Sequence record: LR756504.1
Length of the DNA stretch: 64,000 nt
Strand: one strand, 5' to 3'
Shown: in pieces, positions 4,733 to 33,708 of the stretch
Numbering within the stretch: the stretch's first letter is position 1
How the letters are laid out: the number at the start of each line of letters is the position of its first letter
Notes under the pieces: generated by a model
Seen by the model: only the letters and a program-made list of their open reading frames with translations
What the model was told of the DNA's origin: nothing
Database searches by the model: none
Position numbers and translations under genes: made by a program

Positions 4733-5116
4733 TTAAATAGATAATTCAATATTAGATTCTCTAATAAAAGTAAATACTCTATTTAATTGGATTTGTAATG
4801 AATTATAATCTAATCCGTTTTGTGTAAAATGTTTTTCTTGATTACTTGAAATATTTCCATTTGAAATTTTATTTAATTCAAATTCTATTGACCAAGATAC
4901 ACCTTTTTTTATTTCTAATGAAATATCTATATTATAACCATTAAAATTATCTTGATTTAGAGAATATAACCATATAATATTGCGGTTAATGTCACCAGCT
5001 TCTAATTTGAATAGTTTTAATTCTGGGAATTTCTTTATCCATTTATCGTGGTAATTTTTAAGAAATTCTTCGTTTCTTGCGTTTTCGTATAGATAATCAT
5101 TGAATTTTTCAATCAT
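4733..5116 (-). CDS. Hypothetical protein with capsid-targeting-like leader
   Basis: N-terminus MIEKFNDYLYEN; divergent from the 5128-5155 palindrome. Confidence 0.65.
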   Translation of the reverse strand: MIEKFNDYLYENARNEEFLKNYHDKWIKKFPELKLFKLEAGDINRNIIWLYSLNQDNFNGYNIDISLEIKKGVSWSIEFELNKISNGNISSNQEKHFTQNGLDYNSLQIQLNRVFTFIRESNIELSI

Positions 5117-9491: not shown

Positions 9492-10085
9492 TTATTTCTT
9501 TGAAAAATCAGAGAATGATTTAATACCATTTGTTTTCTTGAAGTCAACTTCATTATTAGGTTTTACAGTAAAATCCGATGATTTTTTGGCTTTCATTGCT
9601 TTTAAAGCATTAAGAGCTTTACTTTTTCGTCTATTTCTTGGTAAGTTAGCATCTCTTTTTCTTATATTCTTATTATTAGCTATTGAATTAGACCAATTTG
9701 AACCTATATCACCCGACCCAACGACACCACCACTTCCAAAAGAATCACCTGCCGATGGCGTAGAAAAACCACCCGTTGACGTAGTTTGGCCTGGGATAGA
9801 GCTTGGTTGAGAACCCATAACTGGTCCCATGCCAGCTAATGATCCCATATTAACAGTACCAACACCAACATCTTCGGATATTTCTTCTTCGAATTCAGAA
9901 ATACTCATAGCATAAAGAACATACTGTTTAATGTATTCTTTATCCGAATACGAATCTTTATAATTTTTACTGTCTTCGAAGGATTCTAAATCTGAATCAG
10001 ATACAGGAATATGATAAAGATGAATTAATCTTTCTTTAATATATTGGTAATCTCTATGGCTATTGAATTCTTTGATATATTTCAT
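9492..10085 (-). CDS. Hypothetical protein with leader and Gly/Ser-rich low-complexity middle
   Basis: MKYIKEFNSH start; GSLAGMGPVMGSQPSS...GGVVGSGD; basic C-terminus. Confidence 0.7.
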   Translation of the reverse strand: MKYIKEFNSHRDYQYIKERLIHLYHIPVSDSDLESFEDSKNYKDSYSDKEYIKQYVLYAMSISEFEEEISEDVGVGTVNMGSLAGMGPVMGSQPSSIPGQTTSTGGFSTPSAGDSFGSGGVVGSGDIGSNWSNSIANNKNIRKRDANLPRNRRKSKALNALKAMKAKKSSDFTVKPNNEVDFKKTNGIKSFSDFSKK

Positions 10086-12131: not shown

Positions 12132-13076
12132 ATGGAAAATATGAAAGAAATCAAAATATTCGCACTATCTCAATCAAAAGCGTTAGGTGAAAATATCGCT
12201 AAAGAATTAAATTTAAATCTTGGAAACTTGATTCTTGATAAATTTTCAGATGGTGAAATGTCTCCTGGTTTTGAAGAATCTATAAGAAGCAGAAAAATTT
12301 TTATTGTTGGTTCTACGCATAATTCAGATTCTATTGTAGAATTAGTACTTACTGTTGATGCTGCAAGAAGAGCTGGTGCGAAACAAATTAATGTTGTAAT
12401 TCCCTATTATGGTTATTCGAGACAGGATAGAAAAGATAAACATAGAGGTGCTATTGGCGCAGGTGCAATAGCGAGTGTTATCGAATCTACTGGTGCGGAC
12501 ACTTTAATGACAATTGATTTACATGCTAGTCAAATTGAAGGATTTTTTAAAATGCCTGTGGTACATATACAAGGAAAATCGGTATTTATTCCGTGTTTAA
12601 AAGGTATAATTGATGATAGTTGGGTTATATGTTCACCTGATGCAGGTGGAGTTACAAGAGCATCTGGATTTTCTCAAAAATTAAATATTCCTTTGGTTGT
12701 AATGAATAAAAGAAGAGATAAACCAAATTCAATAGCATCAATGGAATTAGTGGGTGATGTTAAAGGTAAAAAAGTAATGATTGTAGATGATATGGTGGAT
12801 ACAGGTGGATCTTTGGTTAAATGTGCTGATATACTTATACAAAAAGGTGCTATTGGTGTATCGGCATGTATTTCGCATGGAGTTCTATCGGGTAATGCTA
12901 TAGAAAAAATAAATAAATCGTGTTTAACAAATCTGTTTATATCTGATACTTTGCCGATAGAAGGTAAATTGATGGGAGATACTATAAAAGTGTTTTCATC
13001 TGCTCCTATGTTGGCTAAAGTAATTGCTGGAATAAGCAGGAAAGTAAGTGTTAAACAATTAACATCTGATATATGA
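12132..13076 (+). CDS. prs: Ribose-phosphate pyrophosphokinase (PRPP synthase)
   Basis: FSDGE, PYYGYSRQDRK, DLHASQIEGFF, SPDAGG, KRR, IVDDMVDTGGS, HGVLSG. Confidence 0.95.
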   Translation: MENMKEIKIFALSQSKALGENIAKELNLNLGNLILDKFSDGEMSPGFEESIRSRKIFIVGSTHNSDSIVELVLTVDAARRAGAKQINVVIPYYGYSRQDRKDKHRGAIGAGAIASVIESTGADTLMTIDLHASQIEGFFKMPVVHIQGKSVFIPCLKGIIDDSWVICSPDAGGVTRASGFSQKLNIPLVVMNKRRDKPNSIASMELVGDVKGKKVMIVDDMVDTGGSLVKCADILIQKGAIGVSACISHGVLSGNAIEKINKSCLTNLFISDTLPIEGKLMGDTIKVFSSAPMLAKVIAGISRKVSVKQLTSDI

Positions 13077-14723: not shown

Positions 14724-17324
14724 ATGGACTTTAAAAAAACCTTTATAGATTTAACACAATGGGTAATACCTCATGGATATGAGGAAAGTATTACACATTT
14801 ACTACCAGAAGGATGTCAGAAAGACGGTAAAGGTAATTATTCTATTACTATAGGGGAGTCTGAAACGCTTTTTACATGTCACTTAGATACAGTATCAAGT
14901 AGAGCTAAAATTACACATGTTTTTGAAGATAATTGGATTAAAACAGATGGCACAACAATATTAGGTGGTGACAATAAAGCAGGAGTATGTATTTTGATGT
15001 ATCTAATTGAACAAAATGTTCCTGGTACATATTACTTCTTTGTGGGTGAAGAGTGTGGACGTTTAGGTTCTAAATGGGCATTAGAAAATAATGGAGACTT
15101 TTTTAGGAAGTTTAAACGTGCGATAGCTTTTGATAGAAGAAATAGGGGCTCTATTATTACTCACCAAAGCTCAAGACTTTGTGCATCATCAGAATTCACA
15201 GAAGCTCTTTCTAAAGAAATGGCTAAATCGGGATTAGAATATAAAGCTGATTCAGGTGGATCATATACGGACACTTATACATTTATCGATGCAATACCAG
15301 AGTGTACTAATTTGTCGGCATCAGTTATGGGTGAACATACAACATCTGAAAAGATTGATATTGTACACTGTGAAGAAATTGCAAAAGCCGCTTCATTGGT
15401 TGATTGGGAAAAATTACCTTCTAATAGAGACTTCTCTAAAAAAGAATGGAAAAGTTATAATAACTATAGTAGTGAATGGGATAGCTATTTTGATGAATAT
15501 CGTTCTTATGATGTAAAACCTAAAGCAGAAATTAAGAAAAAATCTATTAGTGAATGTGGATTAGAATTTGATGTTTCTAATATTGATAAGTTCTTCAATT
15601 TGAAAAAAATTGTTGAAGGTGAAGAAATTTACTATAAATCAGAAGATGGTAAAAGTTATTATATTAATATTGATTATAATTTAGTTGCTGTTGAAGAAGA
15701 TATGTATCATGTATATCCATATTTCATACAGCATTATGTTAAAAAAGATAATTTACCAACTACATTTGAAGAATTATGGTATGTTATAAAAGATTTAAAA
15801 ATTTCTTTTAAACCAATTGAAGAACAAAAAAATATTCCATTCTATCAAAACAATATTTGTGAGTATTTTGATTTGGAAGAAATAATGGATAATCACAAAA
15901 ATAGATTATTTATAGACCCATTGACTTTAAGAGAGTTTCAATTTGAATTTGATGATAAATGGGTTGGTATATGGGAAGTTTTAAATAGAGAACCTTATGT
16001 GAGTCCGATATATGCCAACGATAATACTTTTAAATCATTCTCTGAACTGTGGGCTGATATTAGAGAATACGTACCATTTAGAAGAAACGGTAAAGCTGAA
16101 AATCCATTCTTTAATGGGGGGACTAAAATTAAGTCTTATAATAAGATACTTGATGTAGTAAATGTTAATAATGTTATACCATTTACACATGAAAATGTTG
16201 ATAAATATTTTGATTTAGTAAAAGTTAGTGTAAATAAAAGTACAGTTGATAATTACTATAAAAGTCCTAATGGAGAAAAAATATATTTTATTGAGATTTC
16301 ACCAAATTCAAAAGCTTATGTTTGGGAAAGGAATTCTGGATCTTCATCATTAGTTTATAATAAACAATTCTTTTCTTTTGATAGTTTTTGGAGTGAGATT
16401 AAAGATAAAGTAGAATTTAAAAAGAGAGAGGATGATTTAGATGATATACTATCTCAATTGAAAATTCCATTTAGATCAGATAATATCGAAAAATTCTTTA
16501 ATTTAAAAAGAAGAGAAAGAGATAATAGTCATACTAACGCAAATAAAAAAAGTTTATTTTTCAAATCTGAAAATGATAAATCATACTTTTTTAAAATCGA
16601 AGAAGATGGGTATGTATACATGGTAGATTTATCTGGTCAATTAAATGGTAAAACACAAGTTATTATTAATTATGTTAGATATAATTCATTCGAAAAACTT
16701 TGGGAAGATATTAAAGATAAGGTAGATTTTAAAAAAAATGAATCTAAACCAGTTTTATCAAAAGAATCTTTAAAAATACCATTTACAAATGATAATGTTT
16801 GTAGGGTTTTTAATTTTAAGGAACAACAACTAAGAAGTAGACATTATTTAACAGAAGATACCAATATACAGTATTATTTTGATATTCTTGAAAACAATAT
16901 AGTTTATTTGTGGGAAAGAATAAATGGAAAATTTAACACTATTGTTGATGGTGCGGTGTATAATTCATTTGATGATATATGGAAAGATGTTCAATTACAT
17001 GTTAAATTTAAAAAGAGAGAAGTAGTATCATTTACACAAGATAATGTATCAACGTATTTTGATTTGGTAGATAGTAAATTCAGATGTTTTTATTATCATA
17101 AAGAAACTGATAAAAATTTCTTTATACACTGTGGTAAAAATAAAAATAAGTCAGTCGTTAAATTGGTTAAATATAAAGATTTACCAGAAACAAATACAGG
17201 CGTTAAACAGGTTGATAGAATGGAAAATTTATATTTTAGCGGTGTTAATTCTATTAATTCATTTGATGAATTTTGGGAGGAAATTAAAGATAAAGTACCA
17301 TTTAAAAAAAGAGGAGCTAATTAG
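14724..17324 (+). CDS. M28/M20-like zinc peptidase fused to six ~85-95 aa repeats
   Basis: FTCHLDTV, LGGDNKAG, VGEE, AFDR, YTD, GEHT; repeats of the form PF..DN..K.F.L ... SF..LW..IKDKV.FKK. Confidence 0.8.
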   Translation: MDFKKTFIDLTQWVIPHGYEESITHLLPEGCQKDGKGNYSITIGESETLFTCHLDTVSSRAKITHVFEDNWIKTDGTTILGGDNKAGVCILMYLIEQNVPGTYYFFVGEECGRLGSKWALENNGDFFRKFKRAIAFDRRNRGSIITHQSSRLCASSEFTEALSKEMAKSGLEYKADSGGSYTDTYTFIDAIPECTNLSASVMGEHTTSEKIDIVHCEEIAKAASLVDWEKLPSNRDFSKKEWKSYNNYSSEWDSYFDEYRSYDVKPKAEIKKKSISECGLEFDVSNIDKFFNLKKIVEGEEIYYKSEDGKSYYINIDYNLVAVEEDMYHVYPYFIQHYVKKDNLPTTFEELWYVIKDLKISFKPIEEQKNIPFYQNNICEYFDLEEIMDNHKNRLFIDPLTLREFQFEFDDKWVGIWEVLNREPYVSPIYANDNTFKSFSELWADIREYVPFRRNGKAENPFFNGGTKIKSYNKILDVVNVNNVIPFTHENVDKYFDLVKVSVNKSTVDNYYKSPNGEKIYFIEISPNSKAYVWERNSGSSSLVYNKQFFSFDSFWSEIKDKVEFKKREDDLDDILSQLKIPFRSDNIEKFFNLKRRERDNSHTNANKKSLFFKSENDKSYFFKIEEDGYVYMVDLSGQLNGKTQVIINYVRYNSFEKLWEDIKDKVDFKKNESKPVLSKESLKIPFTNDNVCRVFNFKEQQLRSRHYLTEDTNIQYYFDILENNIVYLWERINGKFNTIVDGAVYNSFDDIWKDVQLHVKFKKREVVSFTQDNVSTYFDLVDSKFRCFYYHKETDKNFFIHCGKNKNKSVVKLVKYKDLPETNTGVKQVDRMENLYFSGVNSINSFDEFWEEIKDKVPFKKRGAN

Positions 17325-17335
17325 CTCCTCTTTTT
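17306..17335 (+). terminator. Intrinsic terminator overlapping the stop codon
   Basis: AAAAAGAGGAGCTAATTAGCTCCTCTTTTT. Confidence 0.75.
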
Positions 17336-17354
17336 ATTTTAGCAATTCCCTATT

Positions 17355-17395: not shown

Positions 17396-19069
17396 ATGAA
17401 GTATTTAAAGAAATACGGTAATTTTTCTATTAATGAGGCTACTGAAAATGAGTCTATTCTTATAAAGAATAAAGGTATGTCTAAAGATGAAGAAAAAGCA
17501 TTTTTAAATGACATTTTTACATATATCAAAGGTATTGAAAATATTTCAGATATTTTAAATAATAAAGTTAGAATTAAAAATGATGATATTATAGTAGTAG
17601 ATAGAAGAGGAAAAAATGTACTTTTTAAATATAAGCAGGATAGTAATGAAAAAATTAAAGTTTACATTAAATCTGACTTATTTGAGCAAGGTAAAAAAGA
17701 AGACATATTGAATCTTTTAATTAGTAAAGGAGCGGATGTAGAAGTATCTAAACCAGAAGAAAAATATGATAAAAAAGTAGAGGTTAAAACTGAGCCTAAA
17801 ACAAATATACAAAAAATATCATGGGAAGATTTTAATAAGAAGTGGGTATCTGTTATTAATTTAATTAAAACAGATGGTGTTAAAAATGGTGTACCATTAT
17901 TAAAAATTGCTGACATGAATTCATTATATACAAGTAAGAAAGAATATGTTCTGTTTGTACAAGAGTTTTTAAATTTTAATAATAAAAGTAATTTAATACT
18001 TGATGGTAAATTTGGAAATAATACTTCATTAGAAGTTAGGAAATTTCAAATTGCTAATAATTTAGCAGATGATGGTGTAGTTGGACCTTTAACATGGGAG
18101 AAAATTATGGATTTATCGGGTAATCCGATAAAAGGGTTAAAAATTATTTCAACTTCAACACCAATAGTAAATAATGTTAACAAATTAACTTCAATTAAAG
18201 TAGGTAGTTATTTAAATTCAAAGACTGTTGCATCTTTATTTGAAAATAAAATATTTGAAGCAGTAGTATCTAAAAATGATGTGAAAGTTAAAGTTTTAGC
18301 TAACGATGGTAAAACAATAAAATTACAATTTTCAAATTTAGGTAAAATTGTAGAAGAAGTATTTAATTTAGATGTTAATGGTGCTATAATTAAAGATATA
18401 GCTAAAATGTCAAAAGTTAAAATTGCTTTAGGTATTGAAAGAGAGTCCGTAACTATTGAAAACAGAAAAGGTATTATAAAGGATGTACGCGGTAAAGATA
18501 TGTCATTAGAAACTCTAAAAAATGCAGGAAATGCTTGGTATAATAATCCTAACACAGTTTTAGCTTTAATAGTAAACAATGCTGATAATTCTAATGCAAT
18601 TCATGGTATAAATGAATTATATTTTAAAAATACAAATAGTAATTTATTTCAATTTGCTTTTGATGGAAAATATGAATCCTCTTGGTCGGATGCAACTAAA
18701 TCTATATTTACTTCTTCTATTCTTTCGCCTGTTGCACTTTTTGCAATAGCTGGTACTGGATTTAATGTTGCTTGGAATATGAGAAAGAATTATACTACAC
18801 AATTTAATTTACTTGATATTTTAACTACATATTTACAAGATGCTGAAACAGATGCTAATGTATTACATTGGTGTATAGATGGACCTGGTACAGAAGATAA
18901 TATAATAGAAATGTTAATTAATAAAAGAGCAGGAAAACCTGCTTCATATAAGCAACGAATAGCATCAGAGTATTTATCAAAATATAATGCTACTTTGGGT
19001 GATGATTTAGCAGATGATGATGTTGATTCTGAGTTAATTGGAAAAATAGTTCCAAATTATATAGCATAG
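17396..19069 (+). CDS. Leader-bearing protein with peptidoglycan-binding domain and C-terminal annexin-like repeat(s)
   Basis: MKYLKKYGNFSINE leader; LILDGKFGNNT..EVRKFQIANNLADDGVVGPLTW (PG_binding_1 pattern); DANVLHWCIDGPGTEDNIIEMLINKR...I..EY..KY...L.DDL. Confidence 0.7.
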   Translation: MKYLKKYGNFSINEATENESILIKNKGMSKDEEKAFLNDIFTYIKGIENISDILNNKVRIKNDDIIVVDRRGKNVLFKYKQDSNEKIKVYIKSDLFEQGKKEDILNLLISKGADVEVSKPEEKYDKKVEVKTEPKTNIQKISWEDFNKKWVSVINLIKTDGVKNGVPLLKIADMNSLYTSKKEYVLFVQEFLNFNNKSNLILDGKFGNNTSLEVRKFQIANNLADDGVVGPLTWEKIMDLSGNPIKGLKIISTSTPIVNNVNKLTSIKVGSYLNSKTVASLFENKIFEAVVSKNDVKVKVLANDGKTIKLQFSNLGKIVEEVFNLDVNGAIIKDIAKMSKVKIALGIERESVTIENRKGIIKDVRGKDMSLETLKNAGNAWYNNPNTVLALIVNNADNSNAIHGINELYFKNTNSNLFQFAFDGKYESSWSDATKSIFTSSILSPVALFAIAGTGFNVAWNMRKNYTTQFNLLDILTTYLQDAETDANVLHWCIDGPGTEDNIIEMLINKRAGKPASYKQRIASEYLSKYNATLGDDLADDDVDSELIGKIVPNYIA

Positions 19070-19071
19070 TG

Positions 19072-19098
19072 AAAAAACCTCTAAAATAGAGGTTTTTT
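19072..19098 (+). terminator. Intrinsic terminator
   Basis: AAAAAACCTCTA-AAA-TAGAGGTTTTTT. Confidence 0.7.
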
Positions 19099-19130
19099 TT
19101 TGTATTTCTCATATATTTTTTGTAAATTTG
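19099..19130 (+). promoter_or_regulatory. Bacteroidota-type promoter
   Basis: TTTG - 20 nt - TAAATTTG (19123). Confidence 0.65.
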
Positions 19131-19146
19131 TATTATAATTCAAAAT

Positions 19147-19830
19147 ATGAGAATCTTACTATTATTTATTTTTATTTTCTTATCAACATTATCTTTTTCA
19201 CAAACATTTAAGTATGAGAGAGCTAATATTGATATCTCATTTGATACAAGTTTTTACATTCCAGAATCTTGGAAAATTACAAAAACTAAAAATATTCAGA
19301 ATCAAGCACATTATGTGAATATTATTAAATCTTCTTTGGATAAATACCCTGTTAGTATTTTAAAAAATATTAAAAAAGTATATTTATTGAATACTCTTGC
19401 ATCTAATGGGGTGTCTATGGGCGGCACAAAATACGATGGTTTTATTTTTATTAAGGTTAAAGGTATAACAGATGTAAATATAGAGAAAACTCTCCATCAT
19501 GAGTTTTGTCATATTTTGTATTTTAAGTATGATAATTTATTCCCTACTACAGAGTGGATGAAAAATAATAAAATACAATATATTGGTAGTGGATTTAAAG
19601 CTTCTTATAATGGTAGTGATAGTAAATCTCATAAACCAGAGCTTTTTAAAGAAGGTTTTCTATATGATTATGCAACTATTTCTATAGACGAAGATATGGC
19701 ATCTTTAGCAGAAACATTGTTTTTTGATATTGATAAAATAGATATTAAAAATAATCAATTATTGAAAAATAAATATTTACTTTTAATATCTTTTTATAAA
19801 AAAATAGATTCAAATATTAATATTCATTAA
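19147..19830 (+). CDS. Secreted HEXXH zinc metallopeptidase-like protein
   Basis: Signal peptide; LHHEFCH plus downstream YA...EDMASLAE. Confidence 0.7.
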   Translation: MRILLLFIFIFLSTLSFSQTFKYERANIDISFDTSFYIPESWKITKTKNIQNQAHYVNIIKSSLDKYPVSILKNIKKVYLLNTLASNGVSMGGTKYDGFIFIKVKGITDVNIEKTLHHEFCHILYFKYDNLFPTTEWMKNNKIQYIGSGFKASYNGSDSKSHKPELFKEGFLYDYATISIDEDMASLAETLFFDIDKIDIKNNQLLKNKYLLLISFYKKIDSNINIH

Positions 19831-19853: not shown

Positions 19854-22800
19854 TTAAATGAACGCTTCTAATTCGATTGAATATGTTCTTTTTACTGTAT
19901 AGTTTGCACCATATCCATTTTCACAATTTACTTCAACTAAAATAAATGGGTCCATTATCCTATCTACAGCAAAGTTCAATGGTTTCATGTCCGTTTTCAA
20001 ATGGTTGATTATTCTAACGCTTTTTAATTTAAAATTTGGATCTTTAAAATTTGGATTAGCTGCAAATGTCATAATTTTTACTGTATAAAAATATGGTTTA
20101 AATTCTTCTGAATTAGTGAAAAATTCTAAGTGAATATTATATGTTCTCGAATTATTTTCAACTGGTTGTAAATACCCTTCTATTTTAAAGTCGACTGGTG
20201 TTAACATTTCTTTAATATGGAATTTTCTACTATGTTTAACATCGTGCCATAGTTCGGTATTGTGTGAAGTGTCACCTCTACCCGTTATATCTTTTATACG
20301 TGTTCCTATAGGCATTATCTTATCTCTTAACCATTTCTTCAATCCTAATAATTTAGTGATAACTTCATCTAATGAATATGCCAGTATTATATTACCATCT
20401 TTGTCGGTTATTCTATATGTTAAATTAAATAACCTGGTTTTCTCGTATCTAAAATTTGGAAGGGATTGTATGATATAATCATTAGCTGTCCAACCAGGTA
20501 CAGTATTATCGAATATGTCAGGAATTTCTACTTTGTGTAATTTGTTAAAATTTTTAGATTTACTATCTATGTTTTTATAGTATTCATATAATTCTAAATC
20601 ATTGTATCCAAAGTAATTGATAGCATTTATAAGAGCTTTATAAGAACCTAAATAATTATAAATTTCTGGATATACTAATAGCATTTCTTTTCTTTTTTGG
20701 TTCAAAAATATCCAATCAATACCATTTTCTTTTATGTCATACTCTTTGAATATAAATACGTCCCTATGGTTTATATTATATCCAAAATTATTTAACATTA
20801 CATTAAATCTTTCATCTTCTATTTCTGTTTGTCCTTTTAAAGATATACGTGCTATTTCTTGTGGAATAACTTCTATATTAATTTCTATTGCTACAACTTT
20901 TGTTTTAAATGGTGGAATTATATTTTTAGTTGTGGTTAATGTTGTTTCAGTTTTAATATCTTTATTTAAAGGTCTAAATCTCATTAAAGCAACATTAACT
21001 AAAGTTATCTCTCCTTCGAATCCTGAATTTTTAAATACTGCTTGATTCAATTTACTTGTAATATCTTTACCCGTAATTCTAACTCTTTGTCCAACTTTAA
21101 ATCCTGCTTGAATAAAATTTATTGTAGGTTCAGTGACATATAATTCTTGTCTATCATTATTGAATTCACAAACATCTTTCCATACTTCTTGAAATGAATT
21201 ATTTATTATTTTTCTTGTTGTAATAGTTTGATTGATATTTTCTAATCTCTGTATTAATAAAGTTCTTCTATTTACACCTTCATCTAATGATTTATATCCC
21301 ATGAATACTTGAAGTGGGACTGGTAAAGGATTTAAATCTTGTTCAGAATCTATAAGTTTAAGATTAAATGTGAGATCATTGAATATTGTTTGTTGATATT
21401 TTAAATCAGTTATTTTACTAATATCTCTGTTTGGGCTGTCATTTAAATAAACATTATTATCAGTATCAATTAAAGGTGTTATTCCTTTATATTGATAAAT
21501 TCCTTCGTCTGTTATTTTTAGTTGTTCTCCCGAAAAATCATAAAAGAATACTGATATATCATCATCCTCCAACCAAGTCATTTTGAATTGAACAGGTGCT
21601 TCACCATCAAATCTTTCTCTTGGGTATCTTAAAAATTCTCTTGTACTTAATGTGACAGTATTTACAACAGGTACATCCAATAATCTTGTAAATTCTATAT
21701 TATCCATAGCAACATAACCATTAGATAATCCTGATGCAAAAACAATTTTAATATTTGTAGATGGTATGTCTATATCTATATTAAACGTTCCGAAACTAGT
21801 TTGTATATTTTGGTATAATAGTGTAAATGTCGTTGGTCCATATACTTTATATATTGAAACTGAACCAGGTACATAAGTACCTGATGTGCTACCAAAGTAA
21901 CCACTAGTACCATTATTATATGTAGTATATTTGAAATTATATTTTCCGTGTGATGCTGCAAATATAGGTGTGCTAATACCTAAATTTTCAAAGAATTCAA
22001 CTTTCTCATTGAATACTTGATAAACATCATTGTAAACCCACCAAGCAGAACTATTACTTCCGAATGTTGGATTATCAATTAAATTTACACCTATACCAGA
22101 TGATGAATTATCATAAGTGTTCCAAACAAAACTACTTCTAGTTTCTATATAACTATTAGTATCAGTATTATCCCAAAATGGTCCTTGATAACTTAAACCA
22201 AGTGTTATAGGTTCAACTAAAATAATATTATATTCTTGGTTATTTAATGGATAAATAGAACCATTTATAGCAGTAACCATTCCTGTACCAAAACCAATTT
22301 CTTGGAAGTCTGCACCAGATACTAAATTAACTTCATTTCCAGCTAAAATGATACCACTGTTACCAGGCCTCCAATTAGTAATGATATAAAGTTCACTACC
22401 TGGCGTTGGATTTTTACCTACCCATACAGTATAATTAAAATTTGTTTTTTCCCTGAGTGTAGATAATCTTAAAATATTATTATTTAAATCAATAAAGGAT
22501 GTTCCACTTGTGCTATCTTGAAAATGATCAATTATTATTTCTTGGTCGATTAATGTAGCTTCCCACTCGTCTTTCCATGCCGCTATAGTAGTAGGTATTG
22601 ATCCTTGATATGTAATTGAGTAAGGTTGTCTATTAATTGTTATAGTTAATATTGTTCCAATTTCTTTAAATTCAATATCTGAGTGTAAAATTTTATGATT
22701 ATTAAGTGTTCCATTAACCTCATAGTCAATATGAACATTTGGATATTTTGATTGAAGTACTATTGTATCATATTTTGGATTTCCTTGTACATAACTTTCT

Positions 22801-25800
22801 TCACTTTTTTCAAGCCATGTTAAAATACCAAGTGATTCCAATACTTCAAAGTATCTTCTTCCAACTTCAGTATTATCTGGAAATGTTTTATCTTGTGTTA
22901 ATGTAAATTTAGTTGTTCCCCAATTGAATAAAGTTTCTTCTATATCAACAATATTGTCCTCTGTCGGAGATAAAATTGTTGTCACGTTATCAAAAGTAAC
23001 TGGATAATCAATGCCATTTATTTTCATTAAGAATCCGAATTCATTATCAATATCTTTAATTATTATTTTTCTTTCCCAAAGTTGCGAAATGCTTCTTGGT
23101 TTATTATATTTACCATAAGTGTGATTATATTCTGTTATAAGAGTTTCAACAGTATTTAATAAATCTACTGTTTTGTAATCATTTATTGGTGTTATTACTT
23201 CATATGTAGGTGGTACATTAGTGCCTGCTGTACCATTAGTGGCAGCCATAGCTAAAAATTCGTTAACAGCTATTGTATTATCTTTAAAGAAAGTTATATC
23301 AATATAATCATCATTAGATGTATTTGATTCTACTAAATAATTTCTAGCAAAACAAAGCTCAGTTAAATCTTGATATAAATCAATTCCATATCCAGCAAGT
23401 CCTTGTGTAAAATTAGAAATAAATCTAGATATTAATATATCAGTTGTGGCATTTACATCACCATTTTGTACAAAAGATACAACATTGTCATTTAAGTAAC
23501 AATCTGCTATTATGTTTTCTTTGAATTCTAATATATTAGTAGGATTGGATTCATCATTTGAATCAACCCATACTATTTTTTTATCATCGGGTAGTACATA
23601 CCAATTAGCTGCTTCATTGGGATATGTTCCTGTGAAATATACTATATGAAAATTGCCTTGTGATTTTCTATAGTGTACATAACCATTAAATAAACTATTA
23701 TCAATAACTACCCATTCGTCACCAACCACACCATATTTAGGTTTATTATCAGTTAATATACCATTGTGTAATATAAATTGTTTAGGTGTTGTTGTATTTA
23801 TAATATTTGTTAATTCAAATTTATAATTAGTTTTTTCCCATATCCAAACTTCTTTATCTACTGATATAGCAGCAATACCAACCACAGTATCTCTTATAGC
23901 TTTTGCTAAATTAAAAGCACCTTCTTCTAAAGTATTACCCCTCAACCAATCAACGCCTTCTTTTAAATTATATGATGATGTAGAATTTATTAAAATAGAA
24001 AATGTTATTGATTTTATAAGTTTATAATCAATTAATTCTATTCTATATCCACTTTCATCGTTAGTTTGTGGTGTTAATATGTTTTTAGCTTGATCTACTA
24101 GTATACATTTAAATTGGAAGTTCAAATTATTTTCAGTAATTAAGTTTTCAAAATAAAATCCTAAATCTGGTTTTAATAAATTTGGAGTATAATCTTTATT
24201 AGATAATTTCTCCCATACTAAAATATCTCTATTATTTAAAAAAGCATTTTCAGAAGATTTTGGAAGAAAATCAACTGGCGTAGAAGAAATTAAAACTCTA
24301 TTTGTTTTAAATTTAACATCAATTTTAAATCCGTATTTAACATCAGGAATTAGAACATTTATATCAACGCAGTTTATTTTTATAATTTTTGATATAATGT
24401 CATTACTAATGTCATCATTAATATAATTAACTGTATAAACACCATCATTTTTTTGTGAATTGATGATTGTTAATTTTTTCTTATCATATAATAGTGCTTT
24501 ATATTCTTGTTCGTTCCATTCAGAATTATACAATTGTGTATCAAATAATTTTATTAAATTAATACATTTTACTATACCTTGTGGTATTTTTTTAATTGCA
24601 TTGAGTAAATTTCTAAATTCTCCAAAATTATAATCTTGTCCTAAACTTCCCGCAGTACCATATTGACTACTATAAGTAGAGTTTGGCGTATCCGTTATTA
24701 CCATAATAGCATCTTTTCTATTACCAACGACTGTATAAGTTTTTAAGCCTGATGTTGTGAAAGATGAAAAATCTGCTATTGGTTGTTGCGAAAGATAAAA
24801 ACCATTTGTATCCAATTCAACTGAATAAACATCCTGAAAATATATTTCAGATCCTAGTGGAATCTTTATTTGAATATCATTTCCTTCTATCCATTTAGTA
24901 TAAAAATTAGCATCAGTATTAACAGCTTTTATGTTTGTTATTAAAATATCATCTGCCCATTTTTTTTCAAAATCAACACCATGTTCATTGAATATTTGCA
25001 TTTTATCCAATATTAAATCTTCTGATGTTAATTTTATAGGCTCTACTTTTTCTAAAACATATAAACCTACTGTTTTAAATGTGTCGGAGCTATTTGGATT
25101 GAATATCATATCACCTTCCCATCTATTCACACCATCATTATTAATAAACTCGAAATTTAAATTATCACCCTCTTTATTAAAAAACATTAAATTAGGAGTT
25201 ACATCAGATTCATATTTTTTACCAAATACCGAATTATGTACAGATATTATACAATTTTTAGTTAATTTTATAGTATTAATACCATTTGTAACAGAACATT
25301 CAATTAAAGAACGTACTTTAAAATTTTCAATTAATAAAGTATTACCATTACTACCAGCCGATTTACCATTAACTTTCCATGTATATCCTTGAGCAGGAAA
25401 TGTTGTATTTATATTGAAAGTAATGTTAGTATTATAATTAGTATAATCTGGTCCTATTATTTCAGTTGGAAATTCGAAAACATTAAAATTAATTGAATTG
25501 AAATATTTCAAGTTCCATGATGTACCAGAATCTTCAAAAACGCTTACTGATACAGTTCTTGCACCAGATCTGTAGAAAACTGTGGAAACTGGGTCACTAA
25601 AGCCTATAATTTCAAACAGTTTTTGATCTGATGTGCCTACATATCCTTCATCGAAGTTCCATATCCATTTTTCTGTACCATTTAGTATTAAGGGTGCTGT
25701 TGAAGCTGAACCATCTTCGTAAGTGAAAAATACCTCTTCTTTAATATTTACGTGATTTATATCGAAAGGCTCATTATTTTTATTTATGGTTAGTATATTA

Positions 25801-25805
25801 ATCAC
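19854..25805 (-). CDS. Giant virion structural protein, baseplate-wedge-like
   Basis: 1983 aa, beta-rich with an N-terminal PKD-like segment (WIWNFDEG, YTWKVNG); C-terminal YLGSYKALINAINYFGY..L..YEYY resembles myophage baseplate wedge proteins; late motif upstream. Confidence 0.55.
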   Translation of the reverse strand: MINILTINKNNEPFDINHVNIKEEVFFTYEDGSASTAPLILNGTEKWIWNFDEGYVGTSDQKLFEIIGFSDPVSTVFYRSGARTVSVSVFEDSGTSWNLKYFNSINFNVFEFPTEIIGPDYTNYNTNITFNINTTFPAQGYTWKVNGKSAGSNGNTLLIENFKVRSLIECSVTNGINTIKLTKNCIISVHNSVFGKKYESDVTPNLMFFNKEGDNLNFEFINNDGVNRWEGDMIFNPNSSDTFKTVGLYVLEKVEPIKLTSEDLILDKMQIFNEHGVDFEKKWADDILITNIKAVNTDANFYTKWIEGNDIQIKIPLGSEIYFQDVYSVELDTNGFYLSQQPIADFSSFTTSGLKTYTVVGNRKDAIMVITDTPNSTYSSQYGTAGSLGQDYNFGEFRNLLNAIKKIPQGIVKCINLIKLFDTQLYNSEWNEQEYKALLYDKKKLTIINSQKNDGVYTVNYINDDISNDIISKIIKINCVDINVLIPDVKYGFKIDVKFKTNRVLISSTPVDFLPKSSENAFLNNRDILVWEKLSNKDYTPNLLKPDLGFYFENLITENNLNFQFKCILVDQAKNILTPQTNDESGYRIELIDYKLIKSITFSILINSTSSYNLKEGVDWLRGNTLEEGAFNLAKAIRDTVVGIAAISVDKEVWIWEKTNYKFELTNIINTTTPKQFILHNGILTDNKPKYGVVGDEWVVIDNSLFNGYVHYRKSQGNFHIVYFTGTYPNEAANWYVLPDDKKIVWVDSNDESNPTNILEFKENIIADCYLNDNVVSFVQNGDVNATTDILISRFISNFTQGLAGYGIDLYQDLTELCFARNYLVESNTSNDDYIDITFFKDNTIAVNEFLAMAATNGTAGTNVPPTYEVITPINDYKTVDLLNTVETLITEYNHTYGKYNKPRSISQLWERKIIIKDIDNEFGFLMKINGIDYPVTFDNVTTILSPTEDNIVDIEETLFNWGTTKFTLTQDKTFPDNTEVGRRYFEVLESLGILTWLEKSEESYVQGNPKYDTIVLQSKYPNVHIDYEVNGTLNNHKILHSDIEFKEIGTILTITINRQPYSITYQGSIPTTIAAWKDEWEATLIDQEIIIDHFQDSTSGTSFIDLNNNILRLSTLREKTNFNYTVWVGKNPTPGSELYIITNWRPGNSGIILAGNEVNLVSGADFQEIGFGTGMVTAINGSIYPLNNQEYNIILVEPITLGLSYQGPFWDNTDTNSYIETRSSFVWNTYDNSSSGIGVNLIDNPTFGSNSSAWWVYNDVYQVFNEKVEFFENLGISTPIFAASHGKYNFKYTTYNNGTSGYFGSTSGTYVPGSVSIYKVYGPTTFTLLYQNIQTSFGTFNIDIDIPSTNIKIVFASGLSNGYVAMDNIEFTRLLDVPVVNTVTLSTREFLRYPRERFDGEAPVQFKMTWLEDDDISVFFYDFSGEQLKITDEGIYQYKGITPLIDTDNNVYLNDSPNRDISKITDLKYQQTIFNDLTFNLKLIDSEQDLNPLPVPLQVFMGYKSLDEGVNRRTLLIQRLENINQTITTRKIINNSFQEVWKDVCEFNNDRQELYVTEPTINFIQAGFKVGQRVRITGKDITSKLNQAVFKNSGFEGEITLVNVALMRFRPLNKDIKTETTLTTTKNIIPPFKTKVVAIEINIEVIPQEIARISLKGQTEIEDERFNVMLNNFGYNINHRDVFIFKEYDIKENGIDWIFLNQKRKEMLLVYPEIYNYLGSYKALINAINYFGYNDLELYEYYKNIDSKSKNFNKLHKVEIPDIFDNTVPGWTANDYIIQSLPNFRYEKTRLFNLTYRITDKDGNIILAYSLDEVITKLLGLKKWLRDKIMPIGTRIKDITGRGDTSHNTELWHDVKHSRKFHIKEMLTPVDFKIEGYLQPVENNSRTYNIHLEFFTNSEEFKPYFYTVKIMTFAANPNFKDPNFKLKSVRIINHLKTDMKPLNFAVDRIMDPFILVEVNCENGYGANYTVKRTYSIELEAFI

Positions 25806-28234: not shown

Positions 28235-29377
28235 TTGTATAATAACAAAATTAAACAAAACTCAATGATTATAAATCTTAAAAATCCCACAGACTTATCT
28301 GGTATATATTTTGTATATAAAGGCTCTATTAACTTAGAAAAAAAAGGTTGGTACGGCATTAGTCATTTTATGGAGCATATGTTTTGCAAAAATTTTGATG
28401 ATTTACAAAATGTCTTACAAGAAAATGGTATATCGTGGAATGCTTATACAGATAATAATGAGATAGTTTTTTATTTTACAGGATTAGAGAAATATTTAGC
28501 ACCTTTTAGAAGCATTTTAATAGAGAGGTTATCATATTTTACTCCTACACCAGAAGATTGTGAAAAAGAAAAGAAAATTGTTCTCGAAGAATATATGGAT
28601 GGTTTTACTGAACAGTATTCGTCACATAGCGAAAATTTCTTTAGAAGATATTATGGATCTTATAGCCCTATTGGATTAAAAGAGGATATTGAAAATTTTA
28701 CATATCAAGATTGCTTAGACTTCTTTAAACTACAGTATCAAGAGCCTGATTGTATCGTTAATATTTCAAAAACATTTGAGCTTACGGATGCTAATATTGG
28801 TTTTAAGGATAGAGGTGGATTACTTTTATCTGATTGGAAATTTTCAAAAGATATTATTTTAGAACCAGGTAATTTCCCAGGAGATAAAACTGGTATTATA
28901 TGGAATAAGCCATTACCAGTAGGAACGGAAGATTATCCTGTTATAATGTTTATCAATAGCATGTTAATTAGTGGTTTGAATTCACCACTATATCAAGAAA
29001 TTAGAGAGAAAAGAGGACTTGTATACTATTTACATTGTCATTCATCGAAATTAGGGACTCTTCCTTATTTGAATATTTCTACAATGACAAGTGATAAAAA
29101 TGTAAATGAATTAGAATCTGTTTTAGCAGAAGTGCTTTCAAATAAAGAAAAATATCTAACTCCGCAAAGACTTGAGTTAGTTAGAAAGAGTAGTCTTATA
29201 TTGAGAGAGAAAAAAGATATAAATAGATATACAGACATATCAGATATTATTAATCCTGATATAGCTAAATTGAATGAAAAAATTGAAACTTTAACATTGG
29301 ATGAAATATATCAAGTGTATGATAAACATTTTTCATTGGATGGATTTATTAAAAATAGAGATAAAGAACTTATATGA
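28235..29377 (+). CDS. M16 (insulinase/pitrilysin) family peptidase
   Basis: Inverted zinc motif GISHFMEHM, NAYT, EKKIVLEEY, LYQEIREKRGLVY. Confidence 0.9.
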   Translation: MYNNKIKQNSMIINLKNPTDLSGIYFVYKGSINLEKKGWYGISHFMEHMFCKNFDDLQNVLQENGISWNAYTDNNEIVFYFTGLEKYLAPFRSILIERLSYFTPTPEDCEKEKKIVLEEYMDGFTEQYSSHSENFFRRYYGSYSPIGLKEDIENFTYQDCLDFFKLQYQEPDCIVNISKTFELTDANIGFKDRGGLLLSDWKFSKDIILEPGNFPGDKTGIIWNKPLPVGTEDYPVIMFINSMLISGLNSPLYQEIREKRGLVYYLHCHSSKLGTLPYLNISTMTSDKNVNELESVLAEVLSNKEKYLTPQRLELVRKSSLILREKKDINRYTDISDIINPDIAKLNEKIETLTLDEIYQVYDKHFSLDGFIKNRDKELI

Positions 29378-33357: not shown

Positions 33358-33708
33358 ATGAAATTTTTAAAGAAATTTAACTCTTTCGTTAATGAAAGCA
33401 AAACCTTTACTGCTGGTTTATACCCACACTTTGAAACAGATGATATAATTTATATTGAAAAAGTTCACGAAAATGGCGATGTAGAAGCTTTTGAATTGTT
33501 AGCTACTTTGGATGATATAGTAAAATGGTTTGTAGATAAACACGGTAGAGATACTTTTGAAGATCAATTTAATCCAGAAGAAGGACATACCACCAAAGAT
33601 TGGGATATGTCAGATGAAGAAATTGAAGAGGTTGTTAAAAATAATGATCAATATCTTAAAGAATTCTGTGAAGATAAAATAGCTGAGTGGGTAAAAGTTT
33701 CTGAGTAA
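33358..33708 (+). CDS. Acidic hypothetical protein with capsid-targeting-like leader
   Basis: MKFLKKFNSFVNES. Confidence 0.7.
   Translation: MKFLKKFNSFVNESKTFTAGLYPHFETDDIIYIEKVHENGDVEAFELLATLDDIVKWFVDKHGRDTFEDQFNPEEGHTTKDWDMSDEEIEEVVKNNDQYLKEFCEDKIAEWVKVSE

What the first reader, a model, noticed from the sequence alone, without database searches (positions are those of the whole stretch)
17993..19030. Annexin-like repeat fused to a peptidoglycan-binding domain in a putative head-packaged protein
Seen: DANVLHWCIDGPGTEDNIIEMLINKR...I..EY..KY...L.DDL aligns by eye to the annexin repeat (DA..L..A..G.GTDE..LI.IL..R...I...Y...Y...L..DL). A degenerate copy (NAWYNNPNTVLALI...INELYFKNTNSNL) precedes a hydrophobic segment (SSILSPVALFAIAGTG). 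A PG_binding_1 motif and a leader are upstream. Established: annexins are Ca2+-dependent phospholipid binders, mostly eukaryotic. Inference: an ejected protein bridging peptidoglycan and inner membrane during DNA entry.
Basis: partly seen in the sequence, partly recalled or inferred. Interest (0 to 1): 0.7.

Follow-up and report, generated by a model that had tools for sequence, protein, structure and literature searches.

The report
Phage protein with annexin membrane-binding repeats
A 636-kb uncultured "huge" phage encodes a 557-residue protein that joins a peptidoglycan-binding domain to a real two-repeat annexin module. Annexin is a calcium-dependent membrane-binding fold best known from eukaryotes. 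The protein also starts with a short leader like the one phage T4 uses to load proteins into its capsid.

Summary
ORF 17396-19069 (+) encodes 557 aa.

- **PG-binding domain:** residues 185-237 match PG_binding_1 (E 2e-9, above Pfam's cut-off).
- **Annexin repeat 2:** residues 482-557 are a genuine annexin repeat. The protein alone scores below Pfam's cut-off (15.5 vs 25 bits). A profile of its nine-member family hits only annexins in the PDB (annexin VI, E 3.8e-39). Two independent AlphaFold models superpose on single annexin repeats (rmsd 1.8-2.4 Å over 69-72 residues, Z 9-9.5).
- **Calcium site:** the GxGT loop and the acidic cap (E546) are conserved.
- **Annexin repeat 1:** the "degenerate copy" (368-481) is supported by the model only, not by sequence statistics.
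- **Hydrophobic segment:** it is a roughly 40-residue insertion in the D-E loop of repeat 1. It occurs only in the three closest relatives.
- **N-terminus:** there is no Sec signal. The start (MKYLKKYGNFSINE) resembles the T4 capsid-targeting sequence with an I-x-E cleavage motif. At least 13 genes of this phage share it. The phage has T4-type portal, capsid and maturation-protease genes.

Delivery from the virion and a tethering role between peptidoglycan and membrane are plausible inferences, not shown. No catalytic domain was found. I found no published phage annexin. I rate this a new variant of a known kind.

The parts
17396..19069 (+). Whole gene, 557 aa (P0001). The architecture is leader, unknown N-terminal domain, K/E/P-rich linker, PG_binding_1, small beta-rich domain, then two annexin repeats.
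   Evidence: ORF list and translation. Full-length relatives P0002 (60% identity) and P0003 (73%). Same gene order in L001 and, more loosely, in L005.
17396..17437 (+). N-terminal leader MKYLKKYGNFSINE. It is like a capsid-targeting sequence: aromatic residues three apart, then I-N-E and a putative cleavage before A15. It is not a Sec signal.
   Evidence: The motif occurs at 13 of 325 N-termini, at 0 of 1552 internal Met, and twice elsewhere in 87,929 residues. It is kept in relatives from other contigs. No hydrophobic core. T4 CTS sequence and L/I-x-E rule from PMC8442874 and PMC9026906.
17438..17947 (+). N-terminal domain of unknown function (about residues 15-125), a K/E/P-rich linker, and the helices leading into the PG-binding domain.
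   Evidence: No Pfam, PHROG or NCBIfam family. Low model confidence. No usable Atlas match. Conserved only in P0002; replaced by other sequence in P0028 and P0054.
17948..18106 (+). PG_binding_1 peptidoglycan-binding domain (residues 185-237).
   Evidence: Pfam PF01471, E 2e-9, 38 bits against a cut-off of 23. The PHROG 'endolysin' and NCBIfam peptidoglycan-hydrolase matches cover this stretch only.
18158..18490 (+). Small beta-rich domain of unknown function (about residues 255-365). It is shared with P0028, P0054 and P0042.
   Evidence: pLDDT 70-85 over about residues 270-345 in the full-length model. No family match. Atlas structural matches all have TM below 0.5.
18497..18838 (+). Annexin-like repeat 1 (residues 368-481). 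It is degenerate: there is no GxGT, and W381-Y382 sit in the position of the A-B loop.
   Evidence: The model helices follow the A-E pattern of repeat 2. Two-repeat superpositions: annexin VI Z 11.0 with 134 residues aligned, alpha-14 giardin Z 10.6. The profile alignment to annexin VI extends back into its helix E. No sequence significance on its own.
18668..18793 (+). Hydrophobic insertion (residues 425-466) between helices D and E of repeat 1.
   Evidence: Present in P0001-P0003 and absent from the other six family members. Kyte-Doolittle maximum 1.58 at 437-455. pLDDT below 50.
18839..19066 (+). Canonical annexin repeat 2 (residues 482-557). It has G496-P-G-T499 (18881-18892) and the acidic cap E546 (19031-19033).
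   Evidence: PDB searches by sequence and by profile return only annexins. Exhaustive profile search: 27 of 29 non-self hits carry Pfam Annexin. Structural matches: annexin VI rmsd 1.8 Å over 69 residues at 25% identity, annexin I domain 1 rmsd 2.4 Å over 70 of 73 residues. E546 aligns with the SEL glutamate of annexin A5.
17310..17340 (+). Perfect 9-bp hairpin followed by a T run, at the end of the upstream gene. It looks like a terminator.
   Evidence: Read directly from the sequence. The consensus scan did not list it.
19071..19109 (+). Terminator-like hairpin (13 pairs) and T run, starting two bases after the stop codon. With the upstream hairpin it suggests the gene is its own transcription unit.
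   Evidence: Terminator scan.

Best explanation
The gene encodes a non-enzymatic, two-handed envelope-binding protein of a huge Bacteroidetes-type phage.

Shown by computation: a PG_binding_1 domain, and a C-terminal module of two annexin repeats. The second repeat is canonical and keeps the type II calcium-site residues (GPGT plus E546).

Inferred:
1. The N-terminal 14 residues act like the T4 capsid-targeting sequence. They would load the protein into the prohead, where the phage's gp21-like protease would remove them after I-N-E.
2. The mature protein would leave the virion at infection and reach the periplasm. It cannot get there on its own, because it has no signal peptide.
3. There, the PG-binding domain would hold the cell wall. 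The annexin module would dock on acidic phospholipids at calcium levels typical of the periplasm rather than the cytoplasm. Docking would be helped by the exposed W-Y loop and, in this subfamily, by a hydrophobic loop on the same membrane-facing side.
4. The result would be a tether between wall and membrane that stabilises or positions the entry site.
For: Domains:
- PG_binding_1, E 2e-9.
- Annexin by single sequence against the PDB, E 4.4e-6, all hits annexins.
- Annexin by family profile, E 3.8e-39.
- Exhaustive search of 1.8 billion proteins: 27 of 29 non-self hits are Pfam annexins.
- Relative P0025 passes Pfam's annexin cut-off with 28.7 bits and itself finds plant annexins.

Fold:
- Domain model pLDDT 74, pTM 0.73.
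- All top-50 Foldseek rows are annexins, giardins or annexin A2 fusions.
- VIA Z 9-11.5 for annexins against 6.6 or less for unrelated helical repeats.
- An independent full-length model gives rmsd 1.8 Å over 69 residues to annexin VI.

Calcium site: G496, G498 and T499 are invariant in the family. E546 is kept in 7 of 9 members and aligns with the annexin A5 cap glutamate.

Conserved core across relatives: leader, PG_binding_1, two repeats.

Packaging:
- The leader is specific to N-termini.
- It recurs in another phage contig as KTFEEFIKE and KTFEQFIFE; the T4 sequence is KTYQEFIAE.
- Targeting determinants in T4 are residues 4 and 7 and processing determinants are 8 and 10, cut after L/I-x-E (PMC9026906).
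- T4-type Gp23 (E 3e-22), portal (E 1.5e-66) and head maturation protease (phrog_207 E 1.7e-32; Peptidase_S77 24.7 bits) lie in the same genome.

Route to the periplasm: the neighbouring 227-aa peptidase has a classical signal peptide, so this phage uses Sec signals when it exports proteins. This protein has none.

Precedent: single annexin domains occur in cargo of phage-tail-like injection systems, where they are proposed to help breach membranes (PMC3482391, PMC8213781).
Against: - Nothing shows that the protein is in virions, is cleaved, binds calcium or lipid, or binds peptidoglycan.
- The leader could serve another purpose, for example translation initiation in an AT-rich genome or targeting to another assembly.
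- The protease match to Peptidase_S77 is below Pfam's cut-off, and its specificity is unknown.
- In the leader of this protein one extra residue separates the second aromatic residue from I-N-E.
- T4 internal proteins are small and enter the cytoplasm with the DNA. Here a 543-residue protein would have to stop in the periplasm.
- The spacing between GxGT and the acidic cap is 46 residues, not the canonical 38.
- Repeat 1 is annexin-like only in a predicted model.
- The gene lies beside giant fibre-like genes and peptidases, not in the head module about 54 kb away.
Confidence: 0.4

Rival explanations
1. Tail- or baseplate-associated virion protein. It would be carried on the tail rather than in the head, and would grip the cell wall and membrane as the tail penetrates. 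It would act like the non-catalytic part of a tail-associated lysin.
For: The gene sits next to giant genes (1983 aa here, 1979 aa in L001, 2572 aa and DUF5907/PTL_trimer proteins in L005), and this order is conserved. PG-binding domains of this type occur in virion-associated lysins of jumbo phages (tblastn hits annotated as transglycosylase or tail fiber in phiKZ-like phages).
Against: No recognisable tail or baseplate domain. The N-terminal leader shared with many unrelated small proteins fits head loading better. The giant neighbours have no assigned function.
Confidence: 0.2
2. Lysis-phase accessory protein. It would be made in the cytoplasm and reach the wall only after holin lesions form. 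It would then bind peptidoglycan and membrane to help take the envelope apart or to position an endolysin.
For: It lacks a signal peptide, as canonical endolysins do. The best PHROG and NCBIfam rows are endolysins and peptidoglycan hydrolases.
Against: Those matches cover only the PG-binding domain. No catalytic domain is found by Pfam, PHROGs, NCBIfam or fold search. No holin, endolysin or spanin was recognised among the neighbours that were scanned. This reading does not explain the conserved leader.
Confidence: 0.15
3. Cytoplasmic membrane-repair or superinfection factor. The annexin module would be recruited to the inner leaflet by calcium influx at membrane lesions, as in eukaryotic wound repair. 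This would keep the host alive through a long infection.
For: There is no export signal. Annexins are established membrane-repair proteins in eukaryotes (general knowledge; review PMC12249911, listed).
Against: The conserved PG_binding_1 domain has no target in the cytoplasm. This reading does not explain the leader.
Confidence: 0.07
4. Chance resemblance: a helical, low-complexity AT-rich sequence that merely looks like an annexin.
For: The protein alone is below Pfam's gathering score (15.5 against 25 bits), and the match is not listed at E of 1 or less when the whole protein is scanned. Foldseek E-values are modest, 8.5e-3 at best.
Against: Every significant PDB hit by sequence and by profile is an annexin. 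An exhaustive search gave 27 of 29 Pfam annexins. Two independent models match single annexin repeats at rmsd 1.8-2.4 Å. The signature residues are invariant across nine family members.
Confidence: 0.02

Closest known systems
Bacterial annexins (Kodavali et al. 2014, PMC3894181), for example the single-domain annexin of Cytophaga hutchinsonii and the short paired annexins of Flavobacteria
   Same: Prokaryote-side annexin repeats with one, two or a few repeats rather than the eukaryotic four. They are commonest in Bacteroidetes, the predicted host phylum of this phage (PMC7162821). They are often fused to other domains.
   Different: This one is encoded by a phage; that survey found no annexins in viruses. 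The fusion partner here is PG_binding_1, which that paper's text does not mention (0 occurrences of 'peptidoglycan'). Repeat 1 has lost the calcium loop and carries a hydrophobic insertion. No close relative was found in 185,579 species-representative genomes by pattern scan.
Annexin domains in cargo of phage-tail-like injection systems (PVC/eCIS toxins; PMC3482391, PMC8213781)
   Same: An annexin repeat as a non-catalytic accessory on a protein delivered by phage-derived machinery. The proposed role is to help at the target membrane.
   Different: Those proteins have one annexin domain, always followed by an enzymatic toxin domain, and are thought to act on eukaryotic cells. This protein has no catalytic domain, has a PG-binding domain, and would act on a bacterial envelope.
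T4 internal proteins and Alt (proteins loaded by a capsid-targeting sequence)
   Same: A short N-terminal leader with two aromatic residues three apart, then an aliphatic-x-Glu site. The leader is shared by many otherwise unrelated proteins. The genome has T4-type portal, protease and capsid genes.
   Different: The leader is 13-15 residues, not 10. The protein is much larger than IPI-III. Its domains point to the periplasm, not the cytoplasm. Packaging and cleavage are untested.
T7 ejected core proteins gp14/gp15/gp16 (general knowledge, not tested here)
   Same: The concept is the same: capsid-internal proteins that leave through the tail and act in the wall and membrane layers during DNA entry. 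One of them carries a peptidoglycan-directed domain.
   Different: There is no sequence or fold relationship. T7 gp16 has a lytic transglycosylase, whereas this protein has only a binding domain.
PG_binding_1-containing phage endolysins (for example the phiKZ gp144 type)
   Same: The same N-terminal type of peptidoglycan-binding three-helix domain.
   Different: No catalytic domain here. The C-terminal half is an annexin module instead.

Membership tests
Annexin (Pfam PF00191) | The protein itself scores above Pfam's gathering threshold of 25 bits | tested here: not met
   15.5 bits, E 0.019, on residues 470-557 alone. Not listed at E of 1 or less for the full protein.
Annexin (Pfam PF00191) | Significant homology to annexins at the level of the protein's own family | tested here: met
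   The profile of nine relatives against the PDB gives E 3.8e-39 for annexin VI and 3.9e-24 for annexin A5, and only annexins are listed. In an exhaustive search 27 of 29 hits carry PF00191. Relative P0025 scores 28.7 bits against the 25-bit cut-off.
Annexin (Pfam PF00191) | A repeat of about 70 residues with five helices (A-E) | tested here: met
   This rests on predicted models only. Helices 483-495, 501-511, 516-530, 534-540 and 545-551. Annexin I domain 1: rmsd 2.4 Å over 70 of 73 residues, Z 9.0. Alpha-11 giardin: rmsd 2.3 Å over 72 residues. Annexin VI: rmsd 1.8 Å over 69 residues.
Annexin (Pfam PF00191) | Type II calcium-site signature: GxGT in the A-B loop and an acidic cap residue about 38 residues downstream | tested here: met
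   G496-P-G-T499 is invariant in the family. E546 aligns with the SEL glutamate of annexin A5 and is kept in 7 of 9 members. The spacing is 46 rather than 38 residues because of two loop insertions. Repeat 1 lacks the signature.
Annexin (Pfam PF00191) | A four-repeat core disc (eukaryotic annexins) | tested here: not met
   Only two repeats, and one copy of the module in the 636-kb genome. A self-pairing prediction gave no verdict. Bacterial annexins also depart from four repeats (PMC3894181).
Annexin (Pfam PF00191) | Calcium-dependent binding to acidic phospholipids | not testable with these tools
   Needs liposome co-sedimentation with and without calcium.
PG_binding_1 (Pfam PF01471) | Match above the curated threshold | tested here: met
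   38 bits against 23, E 2e-9, residues 185-237, profile positions 5-57 of 57.
PG_binding_1 (Pfam PF01471) | Binding to peptidoglycan | not testable with these tools
   Needs a sacculus pull-down.
T4-type proteins loaded by a capsid-targeting sequence | An N-terminal leader with aromatic residues three apart, followed by L/I-x-E | tested here: met
   Y7..F10 then I12-N13-E14. Relatives carry KTFEQFIFE and similar; the T4 sequence is KTYQEFIAE. The determinants are described in PMC9026906. One extra residue lies between F10 and I12 in this protein.
T4-type proteins loaded by a capsid-targeting sequence | The same leader on several unrelated proteins of the phage | tested here: met
   13 of 325 genes in the 288-kb record, against 0 of 1552 internal Met. 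Most have no known domain.
T4-type proteins loaded by a capsid-targeting sequence | A gp21-type prohead protease and a T4-type head in the genome | tested here: met
   phrog_207 head maturation protease, E 1.7e-32. Peptidase_S77 at 24.7 bits, below the 27-bit cut-off. Gp23, E 3e-22. Portal_T4, E 1.5e-66.
T4-type proteins loaded by a capsid-targeting sequence | Presence in capsids and removal of the leader | not testable with these tools
   The phage is uncultured. The only sequencing run found is the source soil DNA, with no RNA or proteome.
Endolysin / virion-associated lysin | A peptidoglycan-cleaving catalytic domain | tested here: not met
   Pfam, PHROGs and NCBIfam match only the binding domain. 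Fold searches found only the annexin part, and the other domains were barely tested.
Sec-exported periplasmic protein | An N-terminal signal peptide with a hydrophobic core | tested here: not met
   The maximum 12-residue hydropathy in residues 1-36 is 0.01. By contrast the next gene starts MRILLLFIFIFLSTLSFSQ.

The most novel reading that the evidence does not exclude
This is the first annexin described in a virus of bacteria. It would be the founding member of a small family restricted to huge phages. Its members would be loaded into the capsid by a T4-like targeting leader, ejected at infection, and would use a calcium-switched annexin module plus a peptidoglycan-binding domain to clamp wall and membrane together at the DNA entry site. 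That would make annexin-type membrane binding part of a phage ejection apparatus. It would also mark about 4% of this phage's genes, those with the same leader, as a large capsid-borne cargo set.
Probability: 0.3. Interest if true: 0.78.

Novelty: new variant of a known kind. Interest (0 to 1): 0.6.

Why it matters
- **Annexin distribution.** Annexins are a textbook eukaryotic membrane-binding family with a thin, debated prokaryotic record. A 2014 survey found none in viruses (PMC3894181). A phage annexin fused to a cell-wall-binding domain extends the family to a new host type and a new architecture. It also gives a compact two-repeat protein in which calcium-dependent and calcium-independent membrane contacts could be separated by mutation.
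- **Huge-phage biology.** These phages are uncultured. The shared N-terminal leader offers a sequence-only way to nominate capsid cargo.
- **Entry mechanism.** If the tether idea is right, it shows how very large phages secure the envelope during a long DNA transfer.

Tried and rejected
- **Full-length structure.** The model from a three-sequence alignment was poor (mean pLDDT 46.9). It is usable only for the middle domain and repeat 2.
- **N-terminal and middle domains.** ESM Atlas searches gave no usable lead. Pfam rows for these parts are all weak and below cut-off. They stay unassigned.
- **Repeat 1 by sequence.** hhalign of repeat 1 against repeat 2 gave probability 0.4%. A profile search of the PDB found no annexin. 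So repeat 1 cannot be called an annexin repeat by sequence.
- **Self-pairing.** A prediction of whether two copies of the two-repeat module pair into a four-repeat disc gave no verdict. It is not evidence either way.
- **More relatives.** Pattern scans of IMG/VR and of the species-representative genomes found none. These scans need near-exact peptide motifs, so a blank is weak evidence.
- **Functions of leader-bearing proteins.** Pfam on ten of them gave almost nothing: one AAA_25 match and one weak OmpA-like match. Their functions neither support nor contradict packaging.
- **Head-module ORFs.** Those inspected do not carry the leader.
- **Sequencing runs.** Only the probable source soil DNA run holds the gene and no RNA run does. 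I did not lay reads.
- **Origin of the repeat.** The nearest non-family hits mix a bacterial metagenomic annexin with animal annexins. I did not build a tree, because one 70-residue repeat would not resolve a donor.
- **Membrane-spanning reading of the hydrophobic segment.** I rejected it. The segment sits inside repeat 1 between helices D and E, so a full crossing would split the repeat across the membrane. It is also absent from six of nine relatives.
Full report
**Where the window comes from.** The window is identical to part of LR756504.1, an unannotated 636,363-bp "uncultured phage" genome. Window position 14000 equals record position 238060. This matches one of the four largest complete genomes in Al-Shayeb et al. 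2020 (634, 636, 642 and 735 kb). That paper places them in the Mahaphage clade and predicts that they replicate in Bacteroidetes (PMC7162821). G+C is about 26%. The only public run holding the gene is a soil metagenome, probably the source sample.

**The observation.** The finding's coordinates fall inside one ORF, 17396-19069 (+), 557 aa (P0001).
- Pfam finds PG_binding_1 at residues 185-237 (E 2e-9, 38 bits against a cut-off of 23).
- Pfam's Annexin model is not listed at E of 1 or less for the whole protein. On residues 470-557 alone it gives E 0.019 and 15.5 bits, below the 25-bit cut-off, covering model positions 2-54 of 66.
- phmmer of residues 380-557 against every PDB sequence returned 22 hits, all annexins. 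The best was annexin A5 at E 4.4e-6.

The by-eye alignment was therefore correct, and chance does not explain it.

**The family.** A word-indexed search found only two full-length relatives, P0002 (548 aa, 60% identity) and P0003 (383 aa, 73%).

I then ran an exhaustive HMMER search of 1.84 billion representatives with the C-terminal profile. It found 31 proteins.
- Six of them belong to the family. P0025, P0026, P0028 and P0030 have the same plan: leader, PG_binding_1, two repeats. P0027 is a C-terminal fragment and P0042 has no PG_binding_1 region.
- Of the 29 hits other than P0002 and P0003, 27 carry Pfam Annexin.
- P0025 passes Pfam's own annexin cut-off with 28.7 bits. Its C-terminus alone finds plant annexins at E about 3e-7 in a 5.8-billion-protein database.
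- That search also found P0054 (525 aa), which lies on a 551-kb contig, another huge phage.

A profile of nine family C-termini (alignment A6) hits the PDB at E 3.8e-39 (annexin VI) and 3.9e-24 (annexin A5). Every row shown is an annexin or an annexin fusion, and per-repeat E-values reach about 1e-5 to 1e-6. Invariant family columns are D486, A487, G496, G498, T499, K510, R511, Y518, K519, Y526, Y530 and D541. These form the classic DA..G.GT..KR pattern.

**Structure.**
- The full-length model from three sequences was poor (pLDDT 46.9). Its C-terminal repeat still superposes on annexin VI at rmsd 1.8 Å over 69 residues with 25% identity (Z 9.2), and on alpha-11 giardin at Z 9.5.
- The domain model of residues 365-557, from nine sequences, has mean pLDDT 74.4 and pTM 0.73. 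Values are 77-95 outside the insertion.
- All top-50 Foldseek rows are annexins, giardins or annexin A2 fusion constructs (probability 0.90-1.00, E from 8.5e-3).
- VIA-align against 48,161 representative chains puts annexin-type folds in the first nine places:

| Match | Z | rmsd (Å) | Residues aligned | Covers |
|---|---|---|---|---|
| Annexin A2 fusion | 11.5 | 4.9 | 116 | both repeats |
| Annexin VI | 11.0 | 5.0 | 134 | both repeats |
| Alpha-14 giardin | 10.6 | 5.2 | 126 | both repeats |
| Alpha-11 giardin | 9.3 | 2.3 | 72 | repeat 2 |
| Annexin I domain 1 | 9.0 | 2.4 | 70 of 73 | repeat 2 |
| Astrotactin-2 | 8.5 | 3.1 | 74 | repeat 2 |

Unrelated helical repeats score 6.6 or less in the same search. 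All of this rests on predicted models.

**Calcium site.** In repeat 2 the A-B loop reads D495-G-P-G-T499. E546, in the motif DSELIGK, aligns with the glutamate of KSELTGK in annexin A5. From my knowledge of annexin A5, that glutamate is the bidentate cap (E72) of the type II site. It is kept in 7 of 9 family members. The spacing from GxGT is 46 residues instead of 38, because of short insertions in the B-C and C-D regions. The site looks intact, but binding is untested.

**Repeat 1 and the hydrophobic segment.** Residues 368-481 show the same helix pattern as repeat 2: A 371-375, B 385-394, C 399-413, D 417-422 and E 468-479. They are included in the two-repeat superpositions. The profile alignment to annexin VI also runs back into the helix at 468-479, as helix E of a preceding repeat.

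By sequence alone, repeat 1 has no significant similarity to repeat 2 (hhalign probability 0.4%) or to any annexin in the PDB. "Degenerate annexin repeat" is therefore a structural inference. In place of GxGT its A-B loop carries W381-Y382; W followed by Y or F is kept in 6 of 9 members.

Its hydropathy is borderline (1.58 at residues 437-455) and its model confidence is low.

In annexins the A-B and D-E loops lie on the convex, membrane-facing side (established knowledge, not computed here). An interfacial or re-entrant loop is therefore more likely than a spanning helix, which would split the repeat across the membrane.

**The rest of the protein.** I found no catalytic domain. The PHROG "endolysin" and NCBIfam "peptidoglycan hydrolase" rows cover only the binding domain. 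Residues 15-125 and 255-365 have no assignable family or fold. The first of these is replaced by different sequence in P0028 and P0054. The conserved core of the family is therefore leader, PG_binding_1 and two annexin repeats.

**The leader.** There is no Sec-type hydrophobic core. The next gene, by contrast, starts with a classical signal peptide.

The N-terminus MKYLKKYGNFSINE belongs to a motif (MK, aromatic, two residues, aromatic, aliphatic-N-E) found at the start of 13 of 325 genes in the 288-kb record held for this phage. It occurs at none of 1552 internal methionines and only twice elsewhere in 87,929 residues. Relatives on other contigs keep it, and other genes on the P0025 contig carry it too, for example KTFEEFIKE and, in P0025 itself, KTFEQFIFE.

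The T4 capsid-targeting sequence is MKTYQEFIAE (PMC8442874). In T4, targeting depends mainly on residues 4 and 7, processing depends on residues 8 and 10, and gp21 cuts after L/I-x-E (PMC9026906). Those four positions correspond in kind to the aromatic, aromatic, aliphatic and Glu positions of the phage motif.

The phage also has a T4-type head module at 183-191 kb of the record:
- Gp23, E 3e-22
- a head maturation protease (phrog_207, E 1.7e-32; Peptidase_S77 at 24.7 bits, just under the cut-off)
- Portal_T4, E 1.5e-66

This makes capsid loading a reasoned hypothesis. It is not evidence of packaging.

**Context.**
- Terminator-like hairpins flank the gene on both sides.
- The order 866/877-aa peptidase-repeat protein, this gene, 227-aa secreted zinc peptidase, roughly 1980-aa giant protein is conserved in L001.
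- A looser order (giant protein, this gene, M16 peptidase, family B polymerase) is shared with the 551-kb contig (window genes).
- The gene is single-copy in the genome.

**Mechanism.** My best reading is a non-enzymatic tether delivered with the virion. The leader would load it into the prohead and be cut off. The mature protein would leave at infection. The PG-binding domain would hold the wall. The annexin module would dock on acidic lipids where calcium is high enough, which in bacteria means outside the cytoplasm. Docking would be aided by the W-Y loop and the hydrophobic insertion.

| Status | Content |
|---|---|
| Shown by computation | domain identities, fold, conserved site residues, leader statistics, head-gene repertoire |
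| Inferred | packaging, cleavage, ejection, location, calcium and lipid binding, tethering |

I give the whole chain about 0.4. The domain composition alone I put above 0.9. Rivals are a tail-borne version of the same role (0.2), a lysis-phase accessory (0.15), a cytoplasmic repair factor (0.07) and chance (0.02).

**Comparison and novelty.**
- The closest known proteins are bacterial annexins, which are commonest in Bacteroidetes. The survey that described them found none in viruses (PMC3894181).
- The nearest functional precedent is the single annexin domain on cargo of phage-tail-like injection systems, proposed to help breach membranes (PMC3482391, PMC8213781).
- My literature searches found no phage annexin and no PG_binding_1-annexin fusion. 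The huge-phage paper does not mention annexin in its main text. These searches cover open-access text only.
- I rate it a new variant of a known kind. The fold is known. The new elements are the host type, the fusion, a two-repeat module with one calcium-free repeat, and the apparent capsid-loading leader.

Noticed in passing
window 33358-33708 (+). Looser matches at 9492-10085 (-), 45845-46279 (+) and 4733-5116 (-). Outside the window: G000:C1 5326-5562, 43966-44352, 53163-54776, 59586-60446, 67706-68341, 80299-80772, 247060-247722, 257007-257291, 257338-257736.: A family of N-terminal leaders (for example MKFLKKFNSFVNES, MKNIKKFIDFINES) sits on at least 13 otherwise unrelated, mostly unannotated genes. 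The leaders resemble the T4 capsid-targeting sequence and end in aliphatic-N-E. This may mark a large set of capsid cargo proteins in this phage clade.
   Followed up: partly
G000:C1:59586-60446 (-), locus L011 (outside the window): Another leader-bearing protein (286 aa, starts MKYLKKYQDYGKINEA) has a weak OmpA-family match (E 0.0038, below the cut-off). It may be a second wall-binding protein with the same leader.
   Followed up: no
window 19147-19830 (+): A 227-aa protein with a classical signal peptide and an HExxH zinc-peptidase core (Peptidase_Mx1 E 3.3e-6; LIC13305-family lipoprotein E 6.8e-12). It lies 77 nt downstream of the annexin gene and is conserved next to it in L001. This is an exported phage metallopeptidase of unknown target.
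   Followed up: partly
window 14724-17324 (+) and 42683-44842 (+): Two paralogous proteins (40% identity over 610 residues). Each has an N-terminal PepT/M20-like peptidase domain (phrog_4191, E 2e-61) followed by several roughly 95-residue repeats of unknown function that end in a ...W..IKDKV.FKK motif.
   Followed up: partly
window 19854-25805 (-): A 1983-aa ORF with no Pfam family and only one weak PHROG row. It converges on the annexin gene cluster. A 1979-aa counterpart sits at the same place in L001. It may be a fibre or another virion protein.
   Followed up: no
window 28235-29377 (+), 31809-33296 (+), 12132-13076 (+): An M16 (insulinase-type) peptidase, a family B DNA polymerase and a ribose-phosphate pyrophosphokinase. 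The M16 peptidase and the polymerase keep their order relative to the annexin gene in the 551-kb contig L005.
   Followed up: no
L005:15763-16995 (-): The related 551-kb phage contig carries a TnpB/Cas12f-like gene (OrfB_IS605, Cas12f1-like_TNB) a few kb from its annexin-gene counterpart. The window has no equivalent at that place.
   Followed up: no
LR756504.1 185558-187636 (-), locus L004: The head maturation protease domain (phrog_207) is the N-terminal part of an open frame of about 770 residues, far longer than T4 gp21. It may be fused to a scaffold-like region.
   Followed up: no
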